From the IMG/VR virus record IMGVR_UViG_3300036770_007547, positions 124,001 to 188,000 of that record: a stretch of DNA of 64,000 bases. The stretch is one strand, 5' to 3'. The notes beneath the pieces are model-generated. The model saw nothing but the letters and a program-made list of their open reading frames with translations. It did not search any database and was not told the DNA's origin. Numbering within the stretch: position 1 is the first letter of the stretch; each line of letters starts with the position of its first letter. Made by a program: the position numbers and the translations under genes. Shown here piece by piece: positions 4,153 to 48,100 of this stretch.

Positions 4153-7140
4153 TTATCCTATTCTCATGAATTGAATTCTTGTCTTGGTATTTCCTGTACC
4201 GTACACTGTGACCGAGTTGTTGACTTGCCAGGTATAAGTGTCATTGGCCGCGACTGATATGATATCCGTGACGCTGTTCTTGAGCTGAGAGCCATTTGCT
4301 TGATTGTAACGATCGCCAGCCAATCCATTGATACCACCCCAGGCATCGGGATCAGCACTGACATTGTAGGCCACGTTGACTTGATACACACCGGCCTGGC
4401 TGAATGTGAACACACCGGTACCGTCCAAGGTACCAAAACTGCTGCCTTGGCTGAAATAGGGTGTGGTATTAAATGTCACGTTACCGGTACCGGTGACGTC
4501 GCTGTCTTTCTGGAAACCCAGCACACTGAACACAACAGTACCATTGTAGTAGTCGGCAGTGATGTTGCCCTGTGCTATCACATTGCCGGATATGTTGGTG
4601 TACTCGCCGGTGATGTCTACGTTGGCCACCAGTTCATCAACAGCAACGATGGCGTTGGCCGGAGTGTTCGAGATCCTGACCACGTCAGTGGTGGTGGTCA
4701 ACAAACGTGCATCAATGAAATCACTGGCTTCAGGCGGTTCAGTGAATGTCAGCACATTTCCAGACACTGAATAAGCAGTGGTGGGTATTTGTACCACACC
4801 GTTGATAGATACAATCACCGATGCAGTGGTAGCATCTTGGCTCAACACGAATGCCACCGTGGATCCGTCACCGTTGAACGAGTCTGCTGTGACAATGGTG
4901 ATGTCTTCTTTGGTTTGGTTCCAAGAGTCGTTGTCGTAGTATTCTAGGTCGTTGATGGTGGTGTTGAAACGTATCATACCTTGCACAGGACTGGCAGGTC
5001 TCTGTGCAGTGTTGCCCACTGGTAACAACAAAGAATCCGTGGTACCAATCTTTAAACTGGCGCCCGAAGTAACTGTGGCAGATCCAACGATGACTGCATC
5101 ACTGCCAGCATCAACCACCAGCATGTTGGCATTGTTGTCGCTGGCCACGCGGAAATCAACATCAGCACCGGCATTGTTTATGACAACTATGCCGTCGGTG
5201 CTGGTTATGTCATTGCCGCTGATCACGATGTTGCCAATGTTGGCCTGTGTGTTGGCCTGCACTATGTTGCCTATGATGTTGCCGCTGGCATCAATGTCTG
5301 AAGCTGTGACAAAACTGTTGGCATTGACGTTGGCTGCCAATACGTTGCCTGACGCCGTGACTGTGGCTGTGCTCACATCTGATGTGATCACTGCATTGTT
5401 GGCATTGACGTTGGCAGTGGCAGTGAGCGTGGTGGTTGTTACATTTGTGTTGGCATTGACGTTGGCGGCCAGGATATTGCCCGAAGCTGTGACTGTGGCT
5501 GTGCTCACATCTGATGTGATCACTGCATTGTTGGCATTGACGTTGGCAGTGGCAGTGAGCGTGGTGGTTGTTACATTTGTGTTGGCATTGAGATTGGCCA
5601 CCGTGACATTGCCTGACACATTGGCTGTTTCTAACCAAGCGTTGCCAGCTTCCAAAGTTCCATATTCAACGATGGTGACCACATCATTGGCCACCGTGAC
5701 GTTGCTGGCCAACACCATGTTTGCTGAACTGTTGATCCAGCCCATGAATGCTGCTTGTTGCTGCGTGTTGGTTGTGCTGTAATACACCAGTTCGGTGCCG
5801 CGATCTTTGCCATCATTGGTGGTCAAGACATTGCCGTTTGGACCGGTACCCAACATGATGATGGGATCTTCTACTCGCAAGTCATCGATGTTGATGTAGG
5901 TGAGATTGCCTTGTACTGTGAGGTTACCAGAGATCAAAGCATCGCCGGTTATGTCCAGTGTATTTCCGTACAATCCGCTGTTGGCAATCACGTTTGCAGC
6001 CGTGATGTTTCCTGATGCTACCACAGTGGTGGTATCAACCACACCGTTGGCGATGATATTTGCGGCAGTGACATTGCCAGTGGCCGAAACATAGCCCGTG
6101 ACTTCAATACCAGTCTCGCTGACTGCGGCTACCACATTACTGGTGTCGGTGCCACCCACCATGAGTTTGATGTAGGTACCGGTGGTTTCAGGATTGAGGA
6201 TTAGATTTCCACCATGATTGTGTAGGTATGAATCGTGGGCATAAAATCCCGGATAATCTACAGGATCATCGTATGTGCTGCTGTTGATACCAAGATTAAC
6301 ATAATAGTTGTCGTCGTCGCCATCATCAGCCGTAGCCACATAGTCTGTGGATGCTAGATTGCCTGCGTTGATGTTCTGGAAGTTGACTTGGCTGTAAGCG
6401 TTGACATTGCCACTAAACTGTACCACATGATCGCTGCCCAGCGGTGTGTAATTGGCCACACCGGCATAGAGAGCGTTGTTGCCAGTGGGGTCATCGCCCA
6501 AGAAAATACCTGTGAGACCTTGGAAGATAGAGTTGGGAGCGTCGATGTTGCCGCCGATGTAGATGTCGTTGGTGATGTTGGCAGCATTGGCTGTGATCAG
6601 CTCAGTGGCATTGATGTTGTTGCCATCGATGTTGGCGATGGCGATGAGATTGCCAGCAGATAGATTGCCGGTGACCGAAAAGTTTCCAAGTATATTACCA
6701 CTGAAGGTGATGTTGCCGGTGATGTTGGCATCCACTGCTGTGAGATTGGCCACACGGAGATCTGCATAGCTGTTGATGGTGACCGTGGTATTGGTGAGAT
6801 AGTCGGAGGTGTAGATCGTGGCAAATTCAGAATTGCTTTCGTCCCAGACAAACCCTATGTTGAGTTCGGTACCACGTGCACCAATGAATCCAATGTCAAG
6901 GCTGGGCGATCCAACTTGATCTTTGGCCAGGAGAATGATGGGATCTTCTACCACGAGATCGTGGCTGTCGATCGATGTCACATTGCCTTGTACAGTGAGA
7001 TTTCCGCTGACCGTAAGGTCGCTGCCGTACACGAGATTGTTGGCAATTTTCCCGGATGTGATCGAATAATCCAGCAGTTTTGCGGCTGCATTGACCGTCA
7101 GATCAGTGATCTGATTGTTTTTGATACGGGTAACCGCCAT
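4153..7140 (-). CDS. Fibre/appendage-like structural protein (995 aa)
   Basis: N/G/T/V-rich beta-repeat composition. GNLTVQG...VEDPII module occurs twice. C-terminal LPVG..AQRP...GMIRFNT and GDGSTxxF...NGVVQ domains. Confidence 0.65.
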   Translation of the reverse strand: MAVTRIKNNQITDLTVNAAAKLLDYSITSGKIANNLVYGSDLTVSGNLTVQGNVTSIDSHDLVVEDPIILLAKDQVGSPSLDIGFIGARGTELNIGFVWDESNSEFATIYTSDYLTNTTVTINSYADLRVANLTAVDANITGNITFSGNILGNFSVTGNLSAGNLIAIANIDGNNINATELITANAANITNDIYIGGNIDAPNSIFQGLTGIFLGDDPTGNNALYAGVANYTPLGSDHVVQFSGNVNAYSQVNFQNINAGNLASTDYVATADDGDDDNYYVNLGINSSTYDDPVDYPGFYAHDSYLHNHGGNLILNPETTGTYIKLMVGGTDTSNVVAAVSETGIEVTGYVSATGNVTAANIIANGVVDTTTVVASGNITAANVIANSGLYGNTLDITGDALISGNLTVQGNLTYINIDDLRVEDPIIMLGTGPNGNVLTTNDGKDRGTELVYYSTTNTQQQAAFMGWINSSANMVLASNVTVANDVVTIVEYGTLEAGNAWLETANVSGNVTVANLNANTNVTTTTLTATANVNANNAVITSDVSTATVTASGNILAANVNANTNVTTTTLTATANVNANNAVITSDVSTATVTASGNVLAANVNANSFVTASDIDASGNIIGNIVQANTQANIGNIVISGNDITSTDGIVVINNAGADVDFRVASDNNANMLVVDAGSDAVIVGSATVTSGASLKIGTTDSLLLPVGNTAQRPASPVQGMIRFNTTINDLEYYDNDSWNQTKEDITIVTADSFNGDGSTVAFVLSQDATTASVIVSINGVVQIPTTAYSVSGNVLTFTEPPEASDFIDARLLTTTTDVVRISNTPANAIVAVDELVANVDITGEYTNISGNVIAQGNITADYYNGTVVFSVLGFQKDSDVTGTGNVTFNTTPYFSQGSSFGTLDGTGVFTFSQAGVYQVNVAYNVSADPDAWGGINGLAGDRYNQANGSQLKNSVTDIISVAANDTYTWQVNNSVTVYGTGNTKTRIQFMRIG
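5357..5591. repeat. Intragenic tandem duplication, 132-bp period, 103 bp identical
   Basis: 5357-5459 is identical to 5489-5591 and encodes a 44-aa repeat (NANTNVTTTTLTATANVNANNAVITSDVSTATVT). Confidence 0.9.
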
Positions 7141-10015: not shown

Positions 10016-10552
10016 TTAACTGCTTTGTTCGACTCGAGCCAGCGTCACTGTGCCGTTGTTGGCAGCACCAGATTTGATGGCTGTTTCACCTTCAACACCC
10101 TGGAAGAAGTTGAGGAACCAACGATTGTTGTTCCAATCAACACCCCATTTGTTGGTGATGCGCTTGAGACGGATCGCGGTAGAATCACCGGTGTAAACAG
10201 TGATGGTCATGCTGCCCGAAGTGAGTGCGCTGTCGGCCTCATCACTGAGTGTGCAGACTCCAGATGCGCCATTAGTGGGATCGTACACCAAGAACTTGCG
10301 GCTGCCTTTGGCACGAAGGATGTATCCATCTTGTTCGTCTTGGCCAGCGATGTAAACTCGAACGCCGATGGTAGGGAAGTTGGAAGTACCGCCATTGGCA
10401 GTAGTGGTAGTGAGCTGGTCACCGCCCACCACACCATAAAACTCGGCCGAATCCAGACCATCTGGTGTCACTGGGTTGGTAAGAGTGCTGACTTGCGGGA
10501 AACCAATGTCTTTGGTTGTGTTTGCTTTTTGGATTTTGAGAGGACGTCCCAT
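10016..10552 (-). CDS. Hypothetical virion protein downstream of the capsid gene (MGRPLKI..., 178 aa)
   Basis: AGGAG SD favours the ATG at 10552 over the ORF-track start at 10579. Confidence 0.7.
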   Translation of the reverse strand: MGRPLKIQKANTTKDIGFPQVSTLTNPVTPDGLDSAEFYGVVGGDQLTTTTANGGTSNFPTIGVRVYIAGQDEQDGYILRAKGSRKFLVYDPTNGASGVCTLSDEADSALTSGSMTITVYTGDSTAIRLKRITNKWGVDWNNNRWFLNFFQGVEGETAIKSGAANNGTVTLARVEQSS

Positions 10553-10560
10553 TTTGTTTT

Positions 10561-10634
10561 CTCCTATAAAGAAGTCCAATGTGGGTTCTAGCCACTACGC
10601 GGCGGGTTAGACCGCATAAGACGCCGATTGCGTC
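10561..10634 (-). ncRNA. Putative structured cis-regulatory 5' leader (four hairpins)
   Basis: Stems GACGC/GCGTC, TATGCGG/CCGCGTA, GTGG/CCAC and CTTCT/AGGAG lie between a late promoter and the start codon. Confidence 0.55.
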
Positions 10635-10639
10635 ACAAG

Positions 10640-21911: not shown

Positions 21912-22748
21912 ATGGAAACCAATCCCTTACGCCAGTATTTCCGGCAACCCGCCATCTATGTAAAATTGCCATCTGGCGGCAAATACTACCCCAAAGACAG
22001 CCTGGAGGTCACCGAAAACGGAGAGTATCCGGTGCTGCCCATGACCACCATGGACGAGATCACTTACCGTACACCAGATGCCTTGTTCAACGGCACTGCT
22101 TCGGTGAATGTGATCCAGAGCTGTGTGCCCAACATCAAAAATGCCTGGCACATGCCCAGCATGGACATTGACACTGTGCTGATAGCCATACGCATAGCCA
22201 GTTATGGTCATGAACTCAAACTGGACACCCAGTGCACCAAGTGTGCCAGCATCAACACGTTTGGCGTGGACTTGCGCACAGTGATGGAACGCATGCGTGC
22301 TCCGGACTACAGCCAGACCCAGACCCTGGGTGACCTCGAAATCTATTTCAAACCCATGGATTATCGGCAGATCAATGACAACAACATGATGCAGTTTGAA
22401 GACCAAAAGATGCTGCAAATGCTACAAGATGCCAACGTCAACGACGAGGACAAGCTGCGTCAAGTCGGTGATGTGCTGCGGAAAATCACCAGCATGACCA
22501 CACGGGCCTTGGCACAAAACATTGCCATGATCAAGACTCCCCAGGCCACAGTGACCGAGATCGAGTGGATCTCCGATTGGCTGGAAAACTGCGATCGTAG
22601 CACGTTTTCCAGCATACGCGATCACATCATCAACACCAAGCAGCAGGGCGAGCTACAGCCGCTGAAGATACAGTGCCCAGACTGCCAGAACGAGTACGAG
22701 CAACCATTCACCTTGGACATGGCAAATTTTTTCGCGGACGCCTCCTGA
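21912..22748 (+). CDS. Baseplate hub/tail assembly chaperone (gp26-like)
   Basis: YVKLPSGG, PMTTMDE, DIDTVLIAIRIASYG, two CxxC motifs and a C-terminal NFF. Confidence 0.8.
   Translation: METNPLRQYFRQPAIYVKLPSGGKYYPKDSLEVTENGEYPVLPMTTMDEITYRTPDALFNGTASVNVIQSCVPNIKNAWHMPSMDIDTVLIAIRIASYGHELKLDTQCTKCASINTFGVDLRTVMERMRAPDYSQTQTLGDLEIYFKPMDYRQINDNNMMQFEDQKMLQMLQDANVNDEDKLRQVGDVLRKITSMTTRALAQNIAMIKTPQATVTEIEWISDWLENCDRSTFSSIRDHIINTKQQGELQPLKIQCPDCQNEYEQPFTLDMANFFADAS
22724..22733 (+). other. Putative -1 ribosomal frameshift slippery site (A AAT TTT / T TTT TTC)
   Basis: Two overlapping in-frame X XXY YYZ heptamers 4-5 codons before the stop. The -1 frame is open to 22963. Confidence 0.7.
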
Positions 22749-24146: not shown

Positions 24147-24479
24147 ATGGACATCTATCATGTATGGGCCGACAAGCAAGAAGGCATCTCTGACACCGAA
24201 TGGGTGACAAACATGCGAGCATTTTTTGATCATCTAGTCAGCGAAGCACGCATGGAAAGCTATCGCATCACACGATGCAAGATGGGATTCCGCAGCATCG
24301 CGGACTTGCCGGAATGGCATATCATGATGGAATTTCGTGACATGGCACAACTCGAGCAGTGCTTTCAACGAGTAGCTCCACGCGAAGGTGAACTCGAAGA
24401 CAAGCATCGCAGTTTCAATCAGTTCGTGTCAGGAAATATCCAGCATGCGTTGTTCCGGGATTGGCCCGATCAGTTATGA
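24147..24479 (+). CDS. DUF6614-like protein (110 aa, probable ferredoxin-like alpha/beta barrel)
   Basis: YHVW, YRITRCKMGF, EWHIMME...QLE..F and LFRDWPD pattern, recalled from this family. Confidence 0.55.
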   Translation: MDIYHVWADKQEGISDTEWVTNMRAFFDHLVSEARMESYRITRCKMGFRSIADLPEWHIMMEFRDMAQLEQCFQRVAPREGELEDKHRSFNQFVSGNIQHALFRDWPDQL

Positions 24480-24553
24480 GATCTACTGCGTAGATCTATC
24501 GATTTCGCTGCGCTCATCGATGTTTTTTTTATTGGACCGAGCGCAGCGAGTTC
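24478..24553. other. ssDNA hairpin cluster with two inverted GAGCGCAGCGA (primosome-assembly-site-like) motifs; may also terminate transcription
   Basis: AGATCTAC-N3-GTAGATCT; ATCGAT-[motif]-ATCGAT on -; GGAC-[motif]-GTTC on +; T8 run between the two copies. Confidence 0.5.
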
Positions 24554-24554
24554 A

Positions 24555-24929
24555 GCGTATCATCCAGATGCAACGGTCACACTTAGCCCGTTGCCGGGCC
24601 AAGAAAAAACTGAGGCATCATCCGAGTGCATCACAGTCACACAGCGTTAGAGCTACGAACAGACTTGTTCACGTAGGCGGTTGTCCGGTACCTACTCACT
24701 CCGTCTTATCACAACGGCAACACAGGTGTCGTACGCTGTCACGACGCATGTGCCTGGGGTTTCGCTCCCCTCATTGGGCCTTTTGTATCCTTTTCAAACA
24801 ACCAAACGGCAGGTCTTTGCCATCGTCATCCCGGGGGGTAGTGGTTGAGTGCCCACTGGTGCGGTGGGTCTTCCATCCCTGCGACTCGGGGTCCAGGTCT
24901 AGGGCACAAGAAATTGGCCTGTGCGAGCC
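24555..24929 (-). ncRNA. Putative large structured non-coding RNA (~370 nt) with a pseudoknot
   Basis: About ten consecutive stems, G-U pairs and a GCAA tetraloop that favour the minus strand, and a 7-bp loop-to-distal complementarity. This is the only long gene-free stretch in the window. Confidence 0.65.
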
Positions 24930-25364
24930 TTAACTACCTAGTTTGCCTTTGATGTGTGATCCATGTACTCGAACCTGTATGTGACCATTGTAGTATTCGT
25001 CTGATTCCAGTACTCGTCGTGCAAATTGTTCGCGTGCTTCGATGTAACTACATTCGGCCTTGGACCTACAGTAGTACAAGATTTCGCGTTGGAAATTTTC
25101 GGTGCCCAGTCGTTCCACGTCTTGATTGAGTTCGTCGTTGCTGCCGTAATAGGTCTGCCAGTCTGAATCGATTTTGTTGCTTATGCGTTTGCGTTTTTTG
25201 TTGCCATTCTTGAGTTTGACCACACGATACGTGGTTTTCTTGAACTTGCTGAGTTTTTTGCCTATGTATTTGCGCCCTGACACTAGATTCGTGATGAGAT
25301 AAACGAAGCCCACATACTCTTCGCCGATGTGTTCCACCACATTTGATTCGAACAGCCAGGTCAT
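24930..25364 (-). CDS. Single-domain GIY-YIG nuclease (T4 endonuclease II-like)
   Basis: GFVYLITN...KYIGKK, YYGS, F.REIL, E and YYN motifs. 144 aa, with no separate DNA-binding domain. Confidence 0.85.
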   Translation of the reverse strand: MTWLFESNVVEHIGEEYVGFVYLITNLVSGRKYIGKKLSKFKKTTYRVVKLKNGNKKRKRISNKIDSDWQTYYGSNDELNQDVERLGTENFQREILYYCRSKAECSYIEAREQFARRVLESDEYYNGHIQVRVHGSHIKGKLGS

Positions 25365-25403: not shown

Positions 25404-26450
25404 CTACCATTCTGTGGTGTGCTCCTGATCTTTTAATTTTGCTCGTGTGCATTTGCTCCTGCATTCATGGCTGTCAAATTCCAGGAACTCCGTGGACCAA
25501 AACTCGTCGTTTTTGATGTCGGTGAGATTCCTCTGCCAGAGATCAAATCGGCTGGCACGATCATGCCAGACTTGATTGTGATCGTAACGGTTGGCAGTCC
25601 AACAGCAGGGATATATCTGTCCTCGGCTGTTTAAAAACACGCCTTTGTTGCCGATCAAGCAGATGCCCGAATAGGGCGTGTTGCTTTCCAACTGCTGTGC
25701 TCGCTGCCAAAACAATGTTTTTATGTCTTGGCCCGGCCTTGATCTCCGAGTAAGGCGCACATGATTGCGTTCGAATCGATGTCCATCGGGCACTAGGCCC
25801 GGTTGGGTAGGCTCCAGCAGATCTATGCTACCATACTGTTCGGGATATTTACTACCAAATTTGGTGCTACGAGTGAGCTGATAAAGGTCAAACCCCAACT
25901 GCTGTGCCAGGCTTTGCTGCTGGCCCAAATGATATTCATTGAATCTAAATGCGATGCTGTCCCACACTCGATAAGTGCTGGTGTTCACTGATGCAAACGC
26001 TGTGATGCCTGCGATGATGCTGTCCCAGTCCGAGTTCACGCGATATTGCTGATTGCTGTCTTGATCCCAACCATCCAGGCTCCAGTGTACCTCGTCGTGT
26101 TCGCCCAGCACATGCCCCAGATATTGCCACCAGTCTGGTGGTTTGTAACTGCCATTGGTGATGATGGTGATGGCCACTGTGGGATTCAGGGTCTTGAACC
26201 ATACACAGATGTCCACGAGATCGCGACAGTAGATGGGATCTCCGTCGTTGCCGCAGAACGTGATCTTTTTCAGTTCCTGCACATGCTCGGCGCCAAACTG
26301 GCGTTGGAAAAACGCCAAAGTGAGTTGTCGATTCAAGAGACTGTCGGGCAATTCGGCCCTGGGACATCTCGGGCATTTCAATGCGCATATCGAACTGGGT
26401 TCGATATGCCAGTGATCCCATTTCAGCACAGCTTTTCCTCTCGCTGCCAT
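25404..26450 (-). CDS. Radical SAM protein with a Twitch/SPASM-like C-terminal domain
   Basis: CALKCPRC, CGNDGDP, ITNG, SLDG and YPCCW...C...C motifs. The true start may be GTG 26429. Confidence 0.9.
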   Translation of the reverse strand: MAARGKAVLKWDHWHIEPSSICALKCPRCPRAELPDSLLNRQLTLAFFQRQFGAEHVQELKKITFCGNDGDPIYCRDLVDICVWFKTLNPTVAITIITNGSYKPPDWWQYLGHVLGEHDEVHWSLDGWDQDSNQQYRVNSDWDSIIAGITAFASVNTSTYRVWDSIAFRFNEYHLGQQQSLAQQLGFDLYQLTRSTKFGSKYPEQYGSIDLLEPTQPGLVPDGHRFERNHVRLTRRSRPGQDIKTLFWQRAQQLESNTPYSGICLIGNKGVFLNSRGQIYPCCWTANRYDHNQVWHDRASRFDLWQRNLTDIKNDEFWSTEFLEFDSHECRSKCTRAKLKDQEHTTEW

Positions 26451-27319
26451 TGATCTTGGAAAGCAGTGACATCATGATCGGTGCCACAAGTGCTCAAGCA
26501 AGTTGGTTCGGGGCTGTTGGTATTCCACGACGCTTGCACAGCATCAAAGTCTGTGACATAGTTTTTCAGTCGATTGCCCAGCCAGCAACAGGGATGTATG
26601 CGTCCGCGACAATCCATGTAAAGGCTCTGCTCGTTCAAGGCATGGCATCGTATCTGTTTTTTTCCCGAGCGTGGCTGCGCCCAGTTCACCGGAGCTTCAA
26701 GCCCCGACAGCATGGGCCTCCGAGACACCTTGGCTCGGAACCAACTGAACCCCATGAGGCGCGCGAGATCTCGGCATTCATCGACTTGATGTTGATTGTG
26801 CTTGAACACCAGCATGTCCCAATGCGCTCGTCCACCGCCCGAAATAAATGCTTCCACGTTGGCGATCACTCGACGCCATTCCACACCGCGACGATACACA
26901 GCATTGGTGTCGTCCAGTCCGTCGATGCTGAACACCACGTAATCTTGTTCGCGGTTCATGATACGACCCAGCTCGTACCACCAAAACGTGCCTTGCACAC
27001 CACCATTGGTGTTCATGCCCAGCGTGATGGTGGGATTCTTTTGCCGGAACCAACGATAGATGGCCTGCGTGTTCATGCCCGCTGCGGGATCTCCGTAGTT
27101 TCCACACATGAACATCTTGTCCAGACCCGATATGAATTCGTCGTTGAATTGGGCAGCGATCTGTTCCACACGCAGATGATGGTGCCTGCGCCGATCAAAA
27201 TCAGCGTCGGTTTCTCGACTGCATTGAGCACAGCGTGCCTGGCACACGTCGGTGGGCTCGAGGTGCAGTACTCGTATGTTACGTGATGTCCACGTCGGTG
27301 TTGTAGCTGGTGAATCCAC
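26423..27319 (-). CDS. Radical SAM protein with a Twitch/SPASM-like C-terminal domain (paralogue)
   Basis: CQARCAQC, CGNYGDP, NTNG, FSIDG and HPCCW...C...C motifs. Start codon uncertain. Confidence 0.9.
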   Translation of the reverse strand: MDSPATTPTWTSRNIRVLHLEPTDVCQARCAQCSRETDADFDRRRHHHLRVEQIAAQFNDEFISGLDKMFMCGNYGDPAAGMNTQAIYRWFRQKNPTITLGMNTNGGVQGTFWWYELGRIMNREQDYVVFSIDGLDDTNAVYRRGVEWRRVIANVEAFISGGGRAHWDMLVFKHNQHQVDECRDLARLMGFSWFRAKVSRRPMLSGLEAPVNWAQPRSGKKQIRCHALNEQSLYMDCRGRIHPCCWLGNRLKNYVTDFDAVQASWNTNSPEPTCLSTCGTDHDVTAFQDQWQREEKLC

Positions 27320-29042
27320 CTTCTTTGATCACTTTCAAAATGTTTTCCACACGTCCGGCCAGCTCGTCTCGATGACTCACCAACCAAACCGATTTGTTGC
27401 GATCACGCACCATCTTTTTCAAGAGTGCGAGACTGTTTTCCACGCCCTGGGTGTCCATGCCCGAATCAATGAGCTCGTCGATGAACAGCACATTGATGGG
27501 ATGATACAAGCTCTCCCAGACATCGCGAAAGGCCCACGACATTGACAGTATCAATCTGTTGCGTTCACCACGGCTGAGATTGTCAAAGTCTAGGTCACGT
27601 CCCAGTTCAGTGATCTCCACAGTGAGATCGTTCTGGAATATCACTTGATGTGGCAGTCCGATGCGATCTAGGTAATGTGTGAGGCGACTGTTGAGATAAC
27701 TGAGATTCTGTTCAATGATCTTCTTGCGTATGAACGAATCCTTGTTGGTCAGTAGTTTGAGCAAGAAGTCTTGGTGTTCGTGCAATCTAGACAGCTCGTT
27801 GATGACATCGTATGTGACTTCCTGCAGTGCCTGATTTCGCATGTCGTCGATCTGTTCTTGATACGGGTCAACATCGCTCTGCCGACTCACGAGATCTTTG
27901 CGCAAGGTGTCAAGACTGTTTTTGTGATTCAAGGCCTGCTCGATGTCGTCGTAGAACACCGTGGGGGCTGTACCCAACTCGCCCAGGTCATCGATCTCAT
28001 TGAGATGTTCTATTCGCTGTGTTTCGTTGGCCAAGAGTTGTAAGGCGATCTCTTGCAAGTTCTTCTGCTTCTCTGCCAGAATCTCGTCTTGCTTGCTGTC
28101 ATGCAGTTCTTGTCCGCAGGCATGACAACGATGTTCTCGCAGCGCATCTATGTCGCGTTGCAGTTTGCTTTGATCCTTTTCCAACTTTGAGTCATCCTGA
28201 TCGATCTGCCGGATCCACTTCTGGTGCTCGTCGATCTGTTTTTTCTGGCTGTGATAGAGTTCGAGATCTCGGTGCGCCTGCACTTCGGCTTCGATGTCGA
28301 TGTGTTCCAATCCGTCGATGGCCTGGATCAAGGCATCGCAGTCTTCTTGCTGTTTCTTGATCCACAGACTCTGGCGCTTTTCCAAACTGATGATCTGTTC
28401 TTCGATCCTTCGATTGGCTTCTTGCACGGCACGGATGCGCATCTCTTCCTGCGAGATGGCGTCCTTGGTGGCGCGGTTCAACTCTTTGATGCGTTCCGCA
28501 CGCTCGCTCAATAGCGTGATGCCCAAGAGTTGCTCGATGATGGCACGCTGATCGTTGGCCTTGAGGCTGAGGAACGGCTCGGTATAAGTGTTGAGTGCCA
28601 GGATATGTCGGAACATGTCGTGGCTCATGCCCAAGAGAGATTCGATGGCTTCCTGGGTCTCGCGACTGTCGCCCTGTGCGTCATCGGTCACAGACTGCTC
28701 TTGATCATTGACATAGAACTTCAGCACATTGGGTTTGCGACCGCGCTCGACTCGATAGCTCTGTCCGTTGACCGCAAAGTCAAGGCTCACCAACATGTTT
28801 TTGTTGTTGGTCTTGTTGATGAGATTGTCTCTGCGTATGTTTGTCAGCGCCTGTCCGTACAAGGCATAACTGAGAGCATTGATGATGGTGGTCTTACCGG
28901 TGCCGTTACGACTACCGTCGCCGCCGAGGTCGAGATTTTCGCCCAACACAAGAGTGAGGTCGCTGCGATCAAAATCCACGGCCTGTGTGGCATTGCCCAC
29001 GCTCATGAAATTTTTGACAGTGAGTTTGGCTATCTTGATCAT
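27279..29042 (-). CDS. gp46: Recombination endonuclease ATPase subunit (gp46; SbcC/Rad50-like)
   Basis: KNFMSVG, Walker A NGTGKTT, CHAC zinc hook, LSRGE signature, FIDE Walker B and VSH motifs. Confidence 0.95.
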   Translation of the reverse strand: MIKIAKLTVKNFMSVGNATQAVDFDRSDLTLVLGENLDLGGDGSRNGTGKTTIINALSYALYGQALTNIRRDNLINKTNNKNMLVSLDFAVNGQSYRVERGRKPNVLKFYVNDQEQSVTDDAQGDSRETQEAIESLLGMSHDMFRHILALNTYTEPFLSLKANDQRAIIEQLLGITLLSERAERIKELNRATKDAISQEEMRIRAVQEANRRIEEQIISLEKRQSLWIKKQQEDCDALIQAIDGLEHIDIEAEVQAHRDLELYHSQKKQIDEHQKWIRQIDQDDSKLEKDQSKLQRDIDALREHRCHACGQELHDSKQDEILAEKQKNLQEIALQLLANETQRIEHLNEIDDLGELGTAPTVFYDDIEQALNHKNSLDTLRKDLVSRQSDVDPYQEQIDDMRNQALQEVTYDVINELSRLHEHQDFLLKLLTNKDSFIRKKIIEQNLSYLNSRLTHYLDRIGLPHQVIFQNDLTVEITELGRDLDFDNLSRGERNRLILSMSWAFRDVWESLYHPINVLFIDELIDSGMDTQGVENSLALLKKMVRDRNKSVWLVSHRDELAGRVENILKVIKEGGFTSYNTDVDIT

Positions 29043-30284: not shown

Positions 30285-31301
30285 CTAGAGTGTTTGGTAG
30301 ATCTTCAACAACAAGTTCTTGTCATAGGAATTGGATTCGATGCGCGAGATCTGATCGGTGACGATTTGATCCACGCTTTCGAATCTCACGTCTCCAGGCG
30401 CGAGATCTTCTTCCAGGGCCGATTGCTTGTTGGGTATCAAGGCCATCTCCCGGAGATTGTATTCGTTCACAAACTTTTCTTTGATGTAGTTGGCTTCCTC
30501 GTAGCTGATCTCGATGTCCAGTTTCACACGCACATGCATTTTTTTGCGCAGCACATCGCTGGCATGATCAATGACATGGCTGAGATCCCAGACATTGTAC
30601 AAGGGTTGGTCAGGCCAGGCATGGAACTCGGGGTCAGATCCCCACTCCAAGATCATCATTCCACGTTGATCATCGCCGGCATCGGCAAAGTTGTGCGGGA
30701 AACAGTTTCCGATATAGTTGATGTTGTTTTTCTTTTGTCGGAGATGGAAGTGTCCGGAAAAAACATCACCAAACCCGGAGAAATGCTCGTTCTTGAGTGC
30801 ACCATGGTCTGGCATCTCCACCATGGCATTCATCTTGAAATGCGGCAGTTCGAAATGACCAAACATGTATCTCGCCGACATCTTCTGTATTTTCTTGTGA
30901 TCATCGCCCACCAGCCACGGAGCAATGATGACATCGCCCGCTTGGAACCAGTCGTTGCAGATGTGTATGTTGGGCAGGTGTCGAGCCCACTCCACGCCAG
31001 TGATGTCGCGTTTGTCTCGATAGTAAAGATCGTGATTGCCAGGGATGAAGTAGAATTGGTCAAACGCCGCTGACAATTTTTCCAGGGCACGCAGCGAAAA
31101 TTGCAGGGTCTGTAGATTGATCGATGCACGATGATTGTGCCAGTCGCCCAGGAACATGCCGGTTTCGCAGTTGTTCTCTTTGGCTGTGGCGATGAACCAA
31201 TCTATGAATTGATCACAGTCCTGATTGTGTAGGATGCTGTTGCTTTTGAGACCCCAGTGTATGTCAGTGCATACCGCGGCACGTTGAAATAGATTGGCCA
31301 T
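30285..31301 (-). CDS. gp47: Recombination endonuclease nuclease subunit (gp47; SbcD/Mre11-like)
   Basis: Metallophosphoesterase motifs DIHWG, LGD, GNHD, GHFE and SGHFH. Confidence 0.95.
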   Translation of the reverse strand: MANLFQRAAVCTDIHWGLKSNSILHNQDCDQFIDWFIATAKENNCETGMFLGDWHNHRASINLQTLQFSLRALEKLSAAFDQFYFIPGNHDLYYRDKRDITGVEWARHLPNIHICNDWFQAGDVIIAPWLVGDDHKKIQKMSARYMFGHFELPHFKMNAMVEMPDHGALKNEHFSGFGDVFSGHFHLRQKKNNINYIGNCFPHNFADAGDDQRGMMILEWGSDPEFHAWPDQPLYNVWDLSHVIDHASDVLRKKMHVRVKLDIEISYEEANYIKEKFVNEYNLREMALIPNKQSALEEDLAPGDVRFESVDQIVTDQISRIESNSYDKNLLLKIYQTL

Positions 31302-44600: not shown

Positions 44601-45191
44601 CCCGAGCCAGCACCGCCCACCATCTCGGACCTTACTGCGGCCTACAACACACTCAACGAATACAAGATGGTGTCAGACAACATCGTTCTCAATTCAGTGA
44701 CGTTCAAGCCTTTGTTTGGTGCCAAGGCAGCCACCGAGCTGCGCGGTATCATCAAAGTGGTGCGTGCCCAAAACACCGTGGCTTCGGACAGTGAAATCAA
44801 GAGCCAGGTCATATCAAACATCAACAACTATTTCACCATCGACAAATGGGACTTTGGCGACAGCTTTTTCTTCTCGGAACTGGCAGCATATTTGCACGAG
44901 CGCCTGGGCTCCATCATCAGTTCAGTGGTGCTGGTGCCATTGAATCCGCTCAAAACTTTTGGAGACTTGTACGAAATACGTTCAGCGCCCAACGAAATTT
45001 TCGTCAGCGCAGCCACAGTCAGCGATGTGGAAGTCATTGATGCTCTCACACAAACCAACATCCGTAGTCAGACCAGCGTGGCTGGTTTGTATCCGGTAAG
45101 TACATTGGGATCACCGTCACAGACGGTGGGTCAAGCTGGAACCACACCGTTGGTGACTGGTAACAGCGGAACAGATTACGGGACTATTTGA
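41676..45191 (+). CDS. gp6: Baseplate wedge subunit (gp6)
   Basis: DFETLR, ENFLDTAERRDSV..LA...GY.P, FGDG.F and ESI.EIK..AP.....QNR.V..EDY motifs. Confidence 0.9.
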   Translation: MAKTTRQTAIFGVEDWKRLYQTYREADFQSYDFETLRKSFVDYLRLYYPESFNDYIESSEFIALLDVMAFMGQALAFRNDLNARENFLDTAERRDSVVRLANLVGYTPKRNVPAEGYIKIMSVSTSESITDFNGVNLSNVTIDWDDPANPNWLEQFTTVVNAALVDSQKYGRPGNRQTIQGVDTDEYTINLVPGFLPVIPYVSIVDGVSMPFEVVSATSTGKNFIYEPAPQPSGAFNMLYRNDGQGFGSNDTGFFFLFKQGVLQNQDFNLAEALPNRVVNINIEGCNQNDHWLFKLDDVGSIESEWQYVDNVFAGATEQLAPDQRKFYTITSRTNDQISLRFGDGVFSSIPVGIFRAYVRASNGLEYIINPEEMQNILLPISYISRRGRLETITFTCSVMSPVTNAQARESIAEIKQRAPARYYTQNRMVNGEDYNNFPFTQFNSIIKSKAVARSSIGTSRYVDLTDITGKYSSTNIFGSDGMIYRENTLPSVEFTWLNRNDIVDTIKNSVEPLISSRGMLQFYYQNFPRPSLSVLNAGWQQSTTLVNETTGFFYQGNSTRPLPIGPYTSNNAQYVTVGSLVKFVPPSGYFFDANNRLRAGTPTRADEKLVVWATVTNVVLEGTNQGLGNLPNGVGPVTLNNFVPTGALAELVIPKFSIDLPDSLEQQMIQQIELYRNFAIGYDNLNSTWYLIISSNLNENAVFSRTYAKNTQGLNLDASWLVQFTTDGVTYTVNSRSLDYKFASVLQTRFFYAGSGQVYDNKTGSVINDFVNVLKVNALPDSNLPLPTDIVMDIIGQPLQSDGFVNDYEVVISYKDSDADGVADDPDFFETIVAPNVSPANKLVFFQQVTDFDNLERYLPLTPGEVNSGFDTVQDIELVKAEFINGQIFYARTQNTFWELKIELINGLITRTLVPRLDFLARIGRGDLAFQYRHNSPLTNVIDPGTTNIIDLYLVTDSYYTQYQNYIKDTTGSVPEPAPPTISDLTAAYNTLNEYKMVSDNIVLNSVTFKPLFGAKAATELRGIIKVVRAQNTVASDSEIKSQVISNINNYFTIDKWDFGDSFFFSELAAYLHERLGSIISSVVLVPLNPLKTFGDLYEIRSAPNEIFVSAATVSDVEVIDALTQTNIRSQTSVAGLYPVSTLGSPSQTVGQAGTTPLVTGNSGTDYGTI

Positions 45192-48100
45192 TGGCCAAGC
45201 GCAGGACCATAGACTTACTTCCTGAGATTTTCCAGACAGACACCAATCGTCAGTTCCTGTCGGCCACCTTGGATCAGATGATCCAAGAGCCCAGCGTACA
45301 ACGAATACAAGGTTATGTGGGACGTCGCATCGGTCCAGGAGTGATACCCAGCGATCCATATGTCAACGAGCCCACCAAATCTCGCACCGATTACCAGCTC
45401 GAGCCCGGTGTCATATTCCTCAAACCCGACACCTCCACTGCCACTGACACCATCACCTATCCCGGCATGTTGGATGCTCTGCGATTGGACAACGGAATCA
45501 CGGTTCGCCAGGATCGCATGTTCGAGAATCAGTACTACGCCTATGATCCCTTTGTAGATCTCGACAAGTTCAGCAACTACAGCCAGTACTTTTGGTTGAG
45601 CGAAGGGCCCGATGCGGTCGATGTCAGCAGCACTGCCATCCCCATCACCGATGATTTCACAGTCACACGCGGCAGCAACGACTACACTTTTTCAGGAGTG
45701 GCCGGCGAAAATCCCATATTGACCCTGGCACGTGGCGGAACCTATAATTTTGCGGTAAATCAAAACGGTCACAACTTTTGGATCCAAACAGCACCGGGAG
45801 TGAACGGTGTGAATCCCGACTTCCCCAATCTCAGTACTCGAGATGTGCTGGGCGTGATCAACAACGGCGAAGACAACGGCACAGTGCAGTTCAACGTGCC
45901 CTACAAAGACGCACAGAATTTCTACTATGGTCTCAACACCATGGAGCCTGTGGATCTCTTGGGTCAGGGATTCAAGTTCAACGAGATCAACAACATCTAT
46001 GTCAACGATTTCTTGGCCAAGCATCCCCAGGGCATCGACGGTATCACCGAACTCAACGGACTCACCATTGTTTTCCCCAGTCGCATCGGCGATGCCGATG
46101 ATGGCGGTTGGCGCATAGACACACAGTTTGATCCACTGGTGCGTACCACGCCCGATCGTATTGGCACCTACTTCAGCTATGATCTAGTCACGAGAACCGT
46201 GGCCGATCGCACGTCAGAGACTCGCAGCTTTGACTTGGTCACACGCACCGTGCCCAATCAAGTGGTGCAAGAAGTGGGATTCGATGCCACAGTGCTACCG
46301 TTTGACGAGCAGCCATTTGGAGCCACCACCAATGTCGAGACCGGCGTACCTGATCCCTTGGATGGCACACCCGGCACATTTGACTTTGATCCCGAGGACA
46401 GCAGCACCGATGATTGGGGCTTTGACGCTCCTGAAATCGAAGTCACTGCCGGTCCCACCGATCCCTTGGATGGCACACCGGGCACGTTTGACGTCAGTGG
46501 ATTTGAAGAGCCCCAGGTCCTGTCAGTATCGGGTCCACCCGATCCACTGGACGGTGCCGACGGTAGCTATGACAGCCTACCCTATGATCAAGACACCGAC
46601 ATCGTGTTGCGAGCACAGCGTTACAGCGTGTGGCAGATACAGTATGTCGAGGATGCCGACGGCGAATACTACATGACACTGCGCAGCGTGGCACAGATAC
46701 CCAATCTGTCGCGTTTCCGCATCAGCTACGGTGCCGAATACAGCAGCACCGAATGGTGGAAAGATGGTTCAGGATTCTTGGATCGTGTTCCGCCCTTGAG
46801 TGCCGTGCTAGATGAGCTGTGGTATCAGGATTCCACCAATCCCGATATTTTTGGATTGATACGCTTGGTGGATGTGGCCGATGCCAACCCCATCAATGTC
46901 GACGACATAGTGGGGCAGACCAAATACACCAGTCCCAATGGTGTGATATTCACCAATGGACTCAAGATTAAGTTTCGAGGTCCCACCAATCCAGTTGAAT
47001 ATCAAAATCAAGAATTCTATGTAGAAGGTGTGGGCACTGGTCCAGGCAACGAACTCAAAGTGGGATTCGTTGATGGCGAAGCCTACTTTGGGCCGTTCCA
47101 TGTGTTTGAGAATCGACGCATGACCGGTGCCGAACACAGCGACGAGGTGTTGCAGCAGTACATCTATGACACGCTGGAGGAAAGCATAGCCGCCGCTGGA
47201 TCGGCTGGTCCGTTGTTGGCCACCCTAGGAACCGATCCCCAGCCCGGAGTGATCAAGAACAACGGCATCAAATTGATACCGGTCACAGACATGGTCACTC
47301 CTGAGACTTACACTCTCAACGAACCCGTGCCCTACAGCGACTTTGGATTTGATGTTGGCAACTTTGATGCCACGCTGAATGCTCCGTTGTTGCCTGACTA
47401 TATCACCATGAGTCGAGCAAGTCCGGATCAGAACCCCTGGAGTCGCAGCAATCGATGGTTCCACAAAGATGTGATCGCTTACAGCGCCGAGCTCAACAAT
47501 TCAGTACCAGTCTATGACAACGAGTATCGAGCGCAACGTCCCATTATCGAATTCCGTGCCGGACTCAAGCTCTGGAATTTTGGTTCGCAGTCACAGGGAC
47601 AAGTCAATGTGATCGATTTCCTGGAAACTGATGCTCTCAGCAACATCAATGGGCAGATCGGTTATGGCTATGATGGATACGAATTCGTGGAAGGCACCCG
47701 TGTGGTGTTTGCGTCGGACCGAGATCGAGAAGTTCGCAATCGGATCTATCGTGTCACGTTTGTTGACAGCAACGATGACGGCAATTCTCTGATAAGGCTG
47801 GTGGCCGAACCCAATGGCATAGCACAAGCCAATCAAACTTTGGTGTGTTTGAACGGTGTCCAACAACAAGGACAGGCATTCTGGTTTGACGGAAACAATT
47901 GGATACTGGGGCAACAAAAAACATCCATCAACCAGTCTCTGTTGTTTGATGTGTTTGATTCCGACGGTATCAGTTTTGGAAATCAAACTCGTTATCCCAG
48001 CAACACGTTTGTGGGCAATCGACTGTTTGGATATCGGCGCGACGAAACTGCCACAGTGGACTCGGTGCTGGGCTTTGGACTGACCTATCAAAACATCGAA

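What the first reader, a model, noticed from the sequence alone, without database searches (positions are those of the whole stretch)
24555..24929. Large pseudoknotted non-coding RNA directly downstream of a stand-alone GIY-YIG nuclease
Seen: this is the only long gene-free stretch in the window, and it begins at the nuclease stop codon. On the minus strand it reads as back-to-back stems: GCACAGG/CTTGTGC, CCTG-GAC/GTC-CAGG, CCCAC/GTGGG, a CAACCA/TGGTTG multiloop enclosing ATGGCA/TGCCGT, GGGG/CCCC, GCACA..GTCGT/ACGAC..TGTGT, CCGTT/GACGG, GTAGG..CGG-ACAA-CCG..CCTAC, GAACA/TGTTC and CTTGGCCCG-GCAA-CGGGCTAAG. The loop ACAGCGT (24733-24739) is perfectly complementary to ACGCTGT (24641-24647), suggesting a long-range pseudoknot. 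G-U wobbles and the GNRA loop favour the minus strand, which is also the nuclease strand. Inference: a functional RNA that I cannot assign to a known family. It could be a partner/guide RNA for the nuclease (by analogy with HEARO/omegaRNA-IscB), a replication primer RNA, or a ribozyme.
Basis: partly seen in the sequence, partly recalled or inferred. Interest (0 to 1): 0.9.

Follow-up and report, generated by a model that had tools for sequence, protein, structure and literature searches.

The report
Large phage RNA extending Polynucleobacter-1 motif
The gene-free stretch is a real, roughly 385-base folded non-coding RNA whose first third is a catalogued orphan motif (Polynucleobacter-1), whose remaining two thirds (a pseudoknot and two always-identical 7-base boxes) are not in the Rfam model or the one paper found, and which does not depend on the neighbouring nuclease.

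Summary
The strand is minus, and the overlapping + strand ORF is not coding.

The 5' 134 nt (24796-24929) is Rfam RF01718, Polynucleobacter-1 RNA (111 bits). Its position downstream of PSSM2_218-like genes, which is this GIY-YIG family, was noted in 2010. So the RNA is not unassignable.

What the Rfam model and the one paper found do not describe:
- The conserved RNA runs about 240 nt further.
- The 3' domain is the shared core of three classes: phage type 1, a phage type 2 with a different 5' domain, and a bacterial-island type.
- The 3' domain carries two boxes, A-CUC-N7 and A-UCU-N7. The seven variable bases are identical in 153 of 154 phage RNAs and 96 of 116 bacterial RNAs. They changed together at least 31 times.

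The nuclease is not an obligate partner:
- Its homologues in cultured phages lack the RNA.
- Bacterial copies of the RNA lack the nuclease.
- One phage has an unrelated PD-(D/E)XK nuclease in its place.
- Unrelated genes are sometimes inserted between nuclease and RNA.

Function is unknown. The best guess is a trans-acting RNA that carries a sequence address.

The parts
24930..25364 (-). GIY-YIG nuclease gene (144 aa, catalytic domain only). It is a neighbour of the RNA, not an obligate part of it.
   Evidence: Pfam PF19835 SegE_GIY-YIG, E 3.9e-32, covering residues 3-129. Homologue of P-SSM2 PSSM2_218.
24930..24938 (-). Conserved leader motif (window GGUAGUUAA; consensus CAGUWAA) directly 5' of the RNA. 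It contains the stop codon of whatever ORF lies upstream.
   Evidence: Present upstream of the RNA whether the preceding gene is the GIY-YIG gene, the PD-(D/E)XK gene or an inserted accessory gene.
24796..24929 (-). 5' domain, equal to the Rfam Polynucleobacter-1 RNA. Helices: P1 24920-24924/24904-24908; P2 24891-24897/24878-24885; P3 24864-24868/24852-24856; P4 24842-24847/24799-24804, which encloses a 2-bp CC/GG hairpin and P5 24819-24824/24805-24810.
   Evidence: cmscan RF01718 111.3 bits, E 2.6e-23, model positions 1-141. Covariation.
24756..24795 (-). Conserved UUUGAAA / A-rich linker and a small covarying hairpin, P6 (GGGG-AGCGAAA-CCCC).
   Evidence: Conservation. P6 pair types GC/UA/CG/AU.
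24720..24753 (-). Pseudoknot stem 1: a hairpin that varies in sequence but keeps its pairing. Its loop is 24733-24739.
   Evidence: 9 of 9 tested pairs show double compensatory changes; 90% canonical against 20-65% when the partner is slid.
24641..24647 (-). 3' arm of pseudoknot stem 2, pairing with loop 24733-24739.
   Evidence: 7 of 7 pairs with double changes; 98% canonical.
24650..24717 (-). Three-way junction enclosed by the pseudoknot. P8 24713-24716/24702-24705. P9 24698-24701/24650-24653. P10 24691-24695/24673-24677 with tip 24685-24687/24678-24680 and loop ACAA. The lineage-specific hairpin 24657-24670 also lies here.
   Evidence: The P10 tip is nearly invariant in both phage RNA types.
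24617..24627 (-). Box R1: A-CUC followed by 7 variable bases (GGAUGAU in the window). It is preceded by a GUGUGAC box at 24636-24642.
   Evidence: The 7 bases equal those of R2 in 153 of 154 phage RNAs, across 10 heptamer types. Mutual information with R2 equals the full entropy.
24582..24603 (-). Terminal hairpin P11 (9 bp, loop GCAA) between the two boxes.
   Evidence: Covariation.
24559..24569 (-). Box R2: A-UCU followed by the same 7 bases. It is preceded by a second GUGUGAC box at 24576-24582. This is the likely 3' end region of the conserved RNA.
   Evidence: blastn conservation falls off near 24550.
24505..24549 (.). 11-bp inverted repeat with an A8/T8-containing loop, between the RNA and the convergent DUF6614 gene. 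In relatives a small covarying hairpin (NNC-UUC-GNN) sits here. It is possibly a two-way transcription stop.
   Evidence: Read. The covarying small hairpins are visible. The consensus terminator scan did not call it.
24388..24933 (+). Antisense ORF of 181 aa. It is not a gene.
   Evidence: No family hit.

Best explanation
SHOWN.
- This is a genuine structured non-coding RNA gene of about 385 nt on the minus strand (about 24555-24938).
- It has three parts: (i) a 5' multi-helix domain that is the Rfam Polynucleobacter-1 motif; (ii) a central H-type pseudoknot enclosing a three-way junction; (iii) a 3' domain in which a hairpin is flanked by two boxes, A-CUC-N7 and A-UCU-N7, whose seven variable bases are kept identical.
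- The RNA is a self-contained module of mobile elements. The same 3' core occurs in T4-like freshwater phages with either of two unrelated 5' domains, and in bacterial genomic islands. No protein is shared between the phage and bacterial settings.
- In the phage clade it sits at a fixed place: the last element of the leftward SbcD/SbcC-like (gp47/gp46-type) gene string, just before the convergent junction.

INFERRED.
- It is made by read-through from that gene string and trimmed at the conserved CAGUWAA leader, because no promoter-like site lies between the nuclease gene and the RNA.
- It acts in trans. The two boxes are inferred to be single-stranded and to act as its specificity element, reading the same short sequence twice, most simply by base pairing with a nucleic acid that is not encoded nearby. 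The large folded body serves as scaffold.
- The GIY-YIG gene is a neighbour, not an obligate partner: either a fixed, homing-type nuclease gene parked beside a conserved RNA gene or, at most, one of several interchangeable effectors.
For: Family membership.

Extent of conservation to about 24550: (parts A and B are contiguous in 169 loci).

Covariation of 13 helices and both pseudoknot stems.

Non-coding.

Twin boxes:
- Identical in 153 of 154 phage RNAs.
- At least 31 joint changes on a tree built from the rest of the RNA.
- Same rule in 12 of 12 type-2 phage RNAs.
- Identical in 96 of 116 bacterial-type RNAs, with 6 of 7 bases matching in 16 more and at least 14 box types.

Independence from the nuclease:
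- Homologues in Melnitz (51% identity), a Variovorax phage and P-SSM2 have no RNA.
- Bacterial RF01718 hits of 84-104 bits, including one on a 747-kb Polynucleobacter contig, have no GIY-YIG gene.
- No protein is shared between the two contexts.
- 0.7-1.8 kb of unrelated genes is inserted between nuclease and RNA in 11 loci.
- L195 has a PDDEXK_15 nuclease in place of the GIY-YIG gene.
- Nuclease residues do not follow box position 1 in 11 independent contrasts.

Fixed synteny downstream of the SbcC-like gene.

No promoter-like site between nuclease and RNA. Conserved leader.
Against: - There is no transcript evidence of any kind. The strand, ends and processing are inferred from covariation and G-U pairs only.
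- No partner for the boxes was found: not inside the RNA, not within 3 kb, not in the 64-kb window.
- Pairing with a U-rich partner would tolerate the commonest change (G to A) without requiring both boxes to change, so simple pairing does not fully explain the strict identity.
- 117 of 119 RNA-bearing phage loci found by a DNA pattern alone carry the GIY-YIG gene upstream on the same strand. A working relationship within this clade therefore cannot be excluded.
- That the boxes are single-stranded is assumed: no consensus pairing covers them, but accessibility was not tested.
Confidence: 0.5

Rival explanations
1. Homing-endonuclease neighbourhood. The GIY-YIG gene is a free-standing, homing-type nuclease gene that lodged next to a highly conserved RNA gene and uses that conserved DNA as its cutting site in genomes that lack it. 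T4 SegB does this in the tRNA gene cluster (from my knowledge of the T4 literature; not checked here). On this view the RNA's own job has nothing to do with the nuclease.
For: - The SegE-type GIY-YIG domain, with weak hits to homing endonuclease families.
- A non-homologous nuclease (PDDEXK_15) occupies exactly the same slot, ending 11 nt before the RNA, in L195.
- The upstream ORFs always end inside the conserved RNA leader.
- The slot also accepts other inserted genes.
Against: - The gene is nearly fixed (117 of 119 loci), intact, and evolves along with the phage. It is not sporadic, as homing genes usually are.
- It has no DNA-binding domain (144 aa; the Pfam domain covers residues 3-129).
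- The same family is a widespread conserved gene of cyanophages with no RNA beside it.
- No empty site was found.
Confidence: 0.25
2. The RNA is a guide or adaptor that gives sequence address to small, catalytic-domain-only DNA enzymes encoded next to it: GIY-YIG or PD-(D/E)XK nucleases in phages, and a roughly 189-aa tyrosine recombinase in bacterial islands. The two identical 7-base boxes pair with the two DNA strands or the two DNA partners.
For: - All three adjacent enzymes are bare catalytic domains: GIY-YIG residues 3-129 of 144; PDDEXK_15 residues 5-141 of 171; the recombinase aligns only to the C-terminal half of Xer-type models.
- A nuclease of a different fold sits in the same slot.
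- The recombinase lies on the same strand about 0.5 kb downstream of the RNA in 43 of about 65 bacterial loci that have enough flanking sequence.
- The boxes behave like a programmable code.
- From memory: seven bases is the usual length of a tyrosine-recombinase crossover region, and that region must match between the two partners.
Against: - The nuclease family works without any such RNA in hundreds of cultured phages.
- Unrelated genes separate nuclease and RNA in 11 loci.
- Nuclease residues do not co-vary with the boxes.
- No matching DNA site was found.
- From memory: small Fim-type recombinases bind DNA unaided.
- The protein most tightly linked in bacteria is DUF6641, not the recombinase.
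- No published precedent for an RNA-guided GIY-YIG enzyme was found.
Confidence: 0.12
3. A DNA-level or cis-acting element. The boxes are recombination cores or iterons (a replication or packaging signal), or the fold is merely a 3' end stabiliser or terminator of the operon.
For: - Direct repeats flanking a hairpin resemble origin or recombination sites.
- The element sits at the 3' end of an operon, at a convergent junction.
Against: - Thirteen helices with G-U pairs that read correctly on one strand only, and a 134-nt domain shared with free-standing bacterial RNA genes, are far more than a terminator or a duplex DNA site needs.
- The boxes are only 47-61 nt apart. From memory, that is too close for excision by a tyrosine recombinase.
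- The phages have no recombinase or Rep-like gene nearby.
Confidence: 0.08
4. A decoy or antidote RNA. The bacterial islands use the RNA in a defence or exclusion module, and the phages carry a copy to neutralise it, in the way some phages carry mimics of type III antitoxin RNAs (from memory).
For: - The same RNA core is found in phages and in bacterial mobile islands of the same freshwater habitats, with no shared proteins.
- The box sequences diversify fast.
Against: - No neighbour matches a known defence family.
- Phage box types (RNAURAW) and bacterial box types (mostly A/G-N-C-R-A-A-A) do not overlap.
- Hosts are unknown.
Confidence: 0.08
5. The region encodes protein: the 181-aa + strand ORF, or a small minus-strand ORF that ends at the UGA inside box R2.
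For: - The ORF 24388-24933 is open in the window.
- A 23-codon minus-strand frame from an AUG just before R1 ends at the R2 UGA in the window.
Against: - Only 1 of 123 homologues has any open frame across the region, and there is no codon periodicity.
- The R1-R2 spacing modulo 3 is 56/34/32, and 37 of 122 homologues have a stop two codons upstream.
- No family hits.
Confidence: 0.01

Closest known systems
Polynucleobacter-1 RNA motif (Rfam RF01718; Weinberg et al. 2010, PMC2864571)
   Same: The window's 24796-24929 matches the whole 141-position model at 111 bits. The helices are the same, the habitat is the same (fresh water, Burkholderiales), and the published position downstream of PSSM2_218-like genes is the same.
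   Different: - The published motif and the Rfam model stop at about 141 nt, and the function is unknown.
- Here the conserved RNA continues for about 240 nt more (pseudoknot, junction, twin-box domain).
- The 3' part, not the Rfam part, is the shared core: a second phage class has it with a different 5' domain.
- The 2010 paper found no example in a sequenced phage. Here it lies in a T4-like phage genome window.
HEARO / omega RNA with IscB, and TnpB guide RNAs
   Same: A large structured RNA encoded beside a small nuclease gene in a mobile element.
   Different: - No Rfam match to those families.
- The nuclease is GIY-YIG, not RuvC/HNH.
- RNA and protein occur without each other.
- There is no long variable guide segment at an RNA end, only two internal 7-base boxes.
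IS110-family bridge RNA (comparison from memory)
   Same: A structured RNA with two separate short programmable segments, thought of as reading two DNA partners. The bacterial version here sits near a recombinase.
   Different: - No DEDD/IS110 recombinase.
- The two segments here are identical to each other, rather than specifying two different sites.
- There is no evidence of any DNA partner.
T4 SegB and the tRNA / small stable RNA gene cluster (from memory)
   Same: A GIY-YIG Seg-type gene sitting among conserved structured RNA genes of a T4-like phage.
   Different: The gene here is nearly fixed and lacks a DNA-binding domain. The RNA is not a tRNA: ARAGORN found none in the window.
Large orphan bacterial and phage RNAs (GOLLD, ROOL, OLE, raiA; from memory)
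   Same: Several hundred nucleotides, many covarying helices and pseudoknots, frequent in phages and prophages, function unknown.
   Different: No sequence or structure match. None of those is known to me to carry twin identical variable boxes.
Satellite phage P4 immunity RNA with its seqA/seqC repeats (from memory)
   Same: Two direct repeats flanking a stable hairpin RNA in one transcript, varying in step because of a pairing requirement.
   Different: In P4 the hairpin carries the complementary sequence. Here no complement exists in the RNA or nearby.

Membership tests
Polynucleobacter-1 RNA (RF01718) | Covariance-model score at or above the curated gathering score (37 bits) over the full model | tested here: met
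   111.3 bits, E 2.6e-23, model positions 1-141, not truncated.
Polynucleobacter-1 RNA (RF01718) | The model's helices are kept by compensatory changes in relatives | tested here: met
   P1-P5 are 91-100% canonical, with 3-5 pairs per helix showing double changes.
Polynucleobacter-1 RNA (RF01718) | Published context: downstream of genes related to P-SSM2 PSSM2_218 | tested here: met
   tblastn of the window's nuclease hits PSSM2_218 at 34.5% identity, E 1e-12. Paper text.
Guide RNA of an RNA-guided nuclease (omega RNA / HEARO type) | Match to the RNA family, and a RuvC-type partner (IscB/TnpB) | tested here: not met
   No such Rfam hit, even at E up to 10. The neighbour is GIY-YIG.
Guide RNA of an RNA-guided nuclease (omega RNA / HEARO type) | RNA and nuclease co-occur as an obligate pair | tested here: not met
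   The nuclease occurs without the RNA in cultured phages. The RNA occurs without the nuclease in bacteria and in L195.
Guide RNA of an RNA-guided nuclease (omega RNA / HEARO type) | A variable segment complementary to a DNA target | tested here: inconclusive
   Variable 7-base boxes exist, but no complementary site was found in the window or within 3 kb. Host genomes are unknown.
Group I intron carrying a GIY-YIG homing endonuclease | Intron core RNA on both sides of the ORF, interrupting a host gene | tested here: not met
   No intron family hit. Only 39 nt separate the nuclease start from the upstream gene's stop, and no split gene is present.
Free-standing Seg-type homing endonuclease | GIY-YIG catalytic domain | tested here: met
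   PF19835, E 3.9e-32.
Free-standing Seg-type homing endonuclease | C-terminal DNA-binding domain, and a sporadic presence among close relatives | tested here: not met
   144 aa with the domain covering residues 3-129. Present in 117 of 119 RNA-bearing loci.
Free-standing Seg-type homing endonuclease | Cuts the allele that lacks the gene and drives its own inheritance | not testable with these tools
   Needs enzyme assays and mixed infections.
tRNA / tmRNA / RNase P / 6S and other housekeeping RNAs | Detection by ARAGORN or Rfam models | tested here: not met
   No tRNA or tmRNA in the window. No Rfam hit other than RF01718 in the region.

The most novel reading that the evidence does not exclude
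The twin 7-base boxes are a programmable address. The RNA is then the shared guide or bridge of a previously unrecognised class of RNA-directed DNA enzymes, built from bare catalytic domains that can be exchanged: GIY-YIG or PD-(D/E)XK nuclease in T4-like phages, and a roughly 189-aa tyrosine recombinase in bacterial islands. The identity of the two boxes would reflect the need to read the same core on two strands or on two DNA partners.
Probability: 0.12. Interest if true: 0.95.

Novelty: new variant of a known kind. Interest (0 to 1): 0.66.

Why it matters
Polynucleobacter-1 has sat in Rfam since 2010 as a 141-nt orphan motif. The data here make three points.

1. It is one interchangeable 5' domain of a much larger RNA (about 385 nt in phages, about 430 nt or more in bacteria). 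That places it among the few large, complex-folded RNAs of unknown function, a class that has repeatedly yielded new biochemistry.

2. The RNA is carried both by abundant uncultured T4-like freshwater phages and by integrative islands of freshwater bacteria.

3. It contains a short code written twice, which has been rewritten dozens of times with both copies always changing together. This gives a concrete experimental handle: change one box, both boxes, or swap box types. It also makes the question 'what does this RNA recognise?' directly testable.

For annotation, it removes a spurious 181-aa ORF. It also argues against reading the adjacent nuclease as RNA-guided on the basis of adjacency alone.

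Tried and rejected
- Thermodynamic support. The MFE z-scores are unremarkable on both strands, so I relied on covariation.
- Coding reading of the + strand ORF and of a small minus-strand ORF ending in box R2: rejected.
- A helix between the spacers just 5' of R1 and R2, seen by eye in some lineages. The longest complementary runs are no better than shuffles (mean 3.45 against 3.48).
- An internal partner for the boxes. No column of the RNA shares information with box positions except the other box.
- A complementary or third copy of the boxes within 3 kb in phage loci or within 5 kb in bacterial loci. The apparent peaks were either coding sequence of the DUF6614 and nuclease genes in related lineages or invariant hairpins that merely resemble the commonest box type.
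- Co-variation of nuclease residues with box positions. None was found for position 1; the test is underpowered for the other positions.
- Similarity searches of the RNA against cultured phage records and against plasmids: no match.
- PDB sequence search with the nuclease: nothing useful.
- Defence-system models for the neighbours: nothing beyond a homing-endonuclease model for the nuclease.
- Promoter and terminator consensus scans around the RNA: no promoter-like site, and only an internal hairpin called as a terminator.
- Literature. There is only the 2010 description of the motif, nothing on DUF6641, and no RNA-guided GIY-YIG precedent.
- I did not use the count of structure pairs, because it needs a 552-character structure string typed into the call. 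Equivalent counts with slid-partner controls were computed.
Full report
WHAT IS THERE. The window is part of a T4-like phage. It carries SbcD-like and SbcC-like genes (the gp47/gp46 type) at 30285-31301 and 27279-29042, a baseplate hub gene at 21912-22748, and other structural genes. On the minus strand the SbcC-like gene is followed by two radical-SAM genes and then a 144-aa GIY-YIG gene (24930-25364; Pfam SegE_GIY-YIG, E 3.9e-32). From the other side a DUF6614 gene (24147-24479) converges on it. The 450 nt between them has no credible gene.

I collected 199 related loci from viral contigs: 80 through the nuclease protein and 119 through a short DNA pattern taken from the RNA itself. I aligned 101, 123 and 77 distinct RNAs.
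- RNAalifold on the 77-sequence alignment predicts 63 pairs, 39 of them with compensatory double changes.
- A helix-by-helix count with slid-partner controls gives 89-100% canonical pairing for 12 of the 13 well-registered helices, against 0-80% (mostly 20-55%) when the 3' partner is slid by one or two columns.
- The hairpin 24741-24753/24720-24732 varies almost freely in sequence yet keeps its pairing (9 of 9 tested pairs with double changes).
- Its loop, 24733-24739, pairs with 24641-24647 (7 of 7 pairs with double changes, 98% canonical).
- Fixed G-U pairs confirm the minus strand.
- Two qualifications. The GAACA/UGUUC stem is a lineage-specific insert. And the single sequence folds no better than shuffled versions, so the case rests on comparison.

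IT IS NOT CODING. Of 123 distinct homologues only the window has an open frame across the region. Column variability is flat over the three phases (0.229, 0.240, 0.230). Only 60 of 1491 indels are multiples of three. A 23-codon minus-strand frame that ends at the UGA in box R2 is not conserved either.

PART OF IT IS ALREADY KNOWN. Rfam matches 24796-24929 to RF01718, Polynucleobacter-1 RNA, over the whole model at 111.3 bits against a threshold of 37. Nothing else in Rfam matches the rest of the region, even at E up to 10. The only paper found that mentions the motif is Weinberg et al. 2010. [quoted passage not shown] PSSM2_218 is indeed a homologue of the window's nuclease.

WHAT IS NOT IN THE CATALOGUE.
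1. Conservation continues to about 24555, which is 240 nt beyond the Rfam model. The two parts are contiguous in 169 loci.
2. A second class of phage RNA (12 distinct examples, such as L010 and L044) has no RF01718 domain at the gathering threshold. It has a different, equally conserved 5' and central part, joined to the same GGUACCGG-N-CAACCGCC hairpin and the same 3' domain.
3. Full-length RF01718 hits of 84-104 bits occur on bacterial contigs, including a 747-kb Polynucleobacter contig. These have no GIY-YIG gene but have their own conserved 3' extension of about 290 nt, ending in the same arrangement. A metagenome scan with a pattern from that extension gave 120 more loci. The 3' domain is therefore the common core, and RF01718 is one of at least two alternative 5' domains.

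THE TWIN BOXES. The terminal hairpin (24582-24603) is flanked by two boxes: R1 at 24617-24627 (A, CUC, then GGAUGAU) and R2 at 24559-24569 (A, UCU, then GGAUGAU). Each is preceded by GUGUGAC.
- Across 154 phage RNAs ten different heptamers occur, yet R1 and R2 carry the same one in 153.
- The information shared between corresponding positions equals their full entropy, and no other column of the RNA shares information with them.
- On a tree built from the rest of the RNA the heptamer changed at least 31 times (position 1 alone at least 18 times), always in both boxes.
- The bacterial RNAs obey the same rule with other heptamers (GAA-CUC-N7 and GAA-UCU-N7): identical in 96 of 116, 6 of 7 bases matching in 16, and at least 14 types.
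- The CUC/UCU difference is constant everywhere.
- I found no complementary or third copy in the RNA, within 3-5 kb, or in the window.
- I found no helix that would bring the boxes together and no reading frame that would explain them.
This is the most unexpected feature, and I cannot explain it. Strict identity, kept through many changes with almost no intermediates, implies that both boxes are read by the same sequence-specific partner, or that one is somehow copied from the other.

THE NUCLEASE IS NOT AN OBLIGATE PARTNER.
For a link:
- 117 of the 119 loci found by the RNA pattern alone have the GIY-YIG gene upstream on the same strand, usually ending inside a conserved leader (CAGUWAA) a few bases before the RNA.
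Against an obligate link:
- The family is present in 534 cultured-phage records, mostly cyanophages. The closest ones (Melnitz 51% identity, a Variovorax phage 40%, P-SSM2) have no such RNA.
- The bacterial RNAs have no such gene, and no protein at all is shared between the two contexts.
- In 11 phage loci 0.7-1.8 kb of unrelated genes lies between nuclease and RNA.
- Five loci have the nuclease with no detectable RNA within the available flank.
- In 11 independent contrasts no nuclease residue follows box position 1.
- In L195 the slot is filled by a PD-(D/E)XK nuclease (PF24608, E 1e-25) that ends 11 nt before the RNA.
This last fact can be read two ways. Nuclease genes of different folds may be parking beside a conserved RNA gene, which is the classic behaviour of homing endonuclease genes. 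Or the RNA may work with interchangeable small DNA enzymes.

THE BACTERIAL CONTEXT. In bacteria the RNA is a free-standing gene. A DUF6641-like protein is transcribed divergently from it in 74 loci. A roughly 189-aa tyrosine recombinase that aligns only to the catalytic half of Xer-type models lies on the same strand about 0.5 kb downstream in 43 of about 65 loci with enough flanking sequence. All of this sits inside an integrative island that also carries a 420-aa integrase, an AAA protein and others.

THE MODULE IS NOT HOPPING. In the phage clade the module always follows the SbcC-like gene, with a variable set of accessory genes in between, and faces the baseplate-hub block.

MOST LIKELY MECHANISM, AND HOW SURE I AM. 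Shown: a three-domain structured RNA, a member of RF01718 by its 5' domain, self-contained, and shared by phages and bacterial islands. Inferred: it is transcribed as the tail of the leftward operon, since no promoter-like site lies in between, and is trimmed at the conserved leader. It then acts in trans, with the folded body as scaffold and the two boxes, which I assume to be exposed, as its specificity element, most simply by pairing twice with the same short sequence. I hold the identity claims at above 0.9 and the mechanistic part at about one in three. The main rivals are listed with the results that would refute them: a homing-type nuclease neighbourhood with an unrelated RNA function; an RNA that addresses interchangeable bare catalytic domains; a DNA-level or cis element; and a decoy.

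VERDICT. The feature is real and well observed. The claim of an unassignable RNA and the nuclease-guide reading are not upheld. But the RNA is much larger and stranger than its catalogue entry. I rate it a new variant of a known kind, with interest about 0.66.

Noticed in passing
window 10550-10635 (-): A second catalogued orphan RNA: Rfam RF02980, freshwater-2 (73.6 bits against a threshold of 49.9). It ends in a ribosome-binding site and AUG, so it is probably a 5' leader of the minus-strand gene that starts at about 10552.
   Followed up: no
L010, L013, L021, L032, L044, L045, L059, L074, L020, L034, L040, L052 (about 215 nt before to 185 nt after the nhmmer hit listed): A second class of phage RNA. 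It has no RF01718 domain but a different conserved 5' and central part of about 250 nt, fused to the same P10 hairpin and twin-box 3' domain. It includes a box type not seen in class 1 (AGAUCAA).
   Followed up: partly
L195 4127-4642 (+), RNA from 4653: A PD-(D/E)XK nuclease (PF24608) occupies the slot that the GIY-YIG gene holds everywhere else, directly upstream of the RNA and downstream of the SbcC-like gene.
   Followed up: partly
L209 4266-7711 and the 120 metagenome loci L213-L332: A conserved bacterial island module around the RNA: a divergent DUF6641-like protein; a catalytic-domain-only tyrosine recombinase of about 189 aa on the RNA's strand; proteins of 276 aa and 264 aa; an AAA protein of 229 aa; and a 420-aa integrase. 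None matches a known defence family.
   Followed up: partly
L209 about 6500-6600 (-) and equivalent places 40-100 nt after box R2 in bacterial-type loci: An invariant hairpin (GUGAUGAGCGA..AGCGAAAUCAC) whose letters recall a hammerhead core, followed by a second conserved hairpin. Rfam gives no hit there, so the bacterial RNA may be about 100 nt longer still.
   Followed up: no
L007, L033, L053, L077, L092, L100, L106, L137, L160, L164, L168 (between the nuclease stop and the RNA): The junction between nuclease gene and RNA is a hotspot for accessory genes: a recurring family of about 340 aa with no known domain; proteins of 265-281 aa starting M..(L/I)VF(S/A/T)GCS; and a B12-binding radical-SAM protein with a 151-aa partner. 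Every inserted ORF ends in the same leader motif before the RNA.
   Followed up: partly
window 25404-27319 (-): Two tandem radical-SAM-like genes (348 and 298 aa) lie between the SbcC-like gene and the nuclease. Their number varies from none to two among related phages.
   Followed up: no
window 45188-60148 (+): A single ORF of 4986 aa in the structural region. It was not examined.
   Followed up: no
window 24505-24549: An 11-bp inverted repeat with a 23-nt loop containing A8 (T8 on the + strand), between the RNA and the convergent DUF6614 gene. Relatives have a small covarying hairpin at this place. The consensus scan does not call it a terminator.
   Followed up: no
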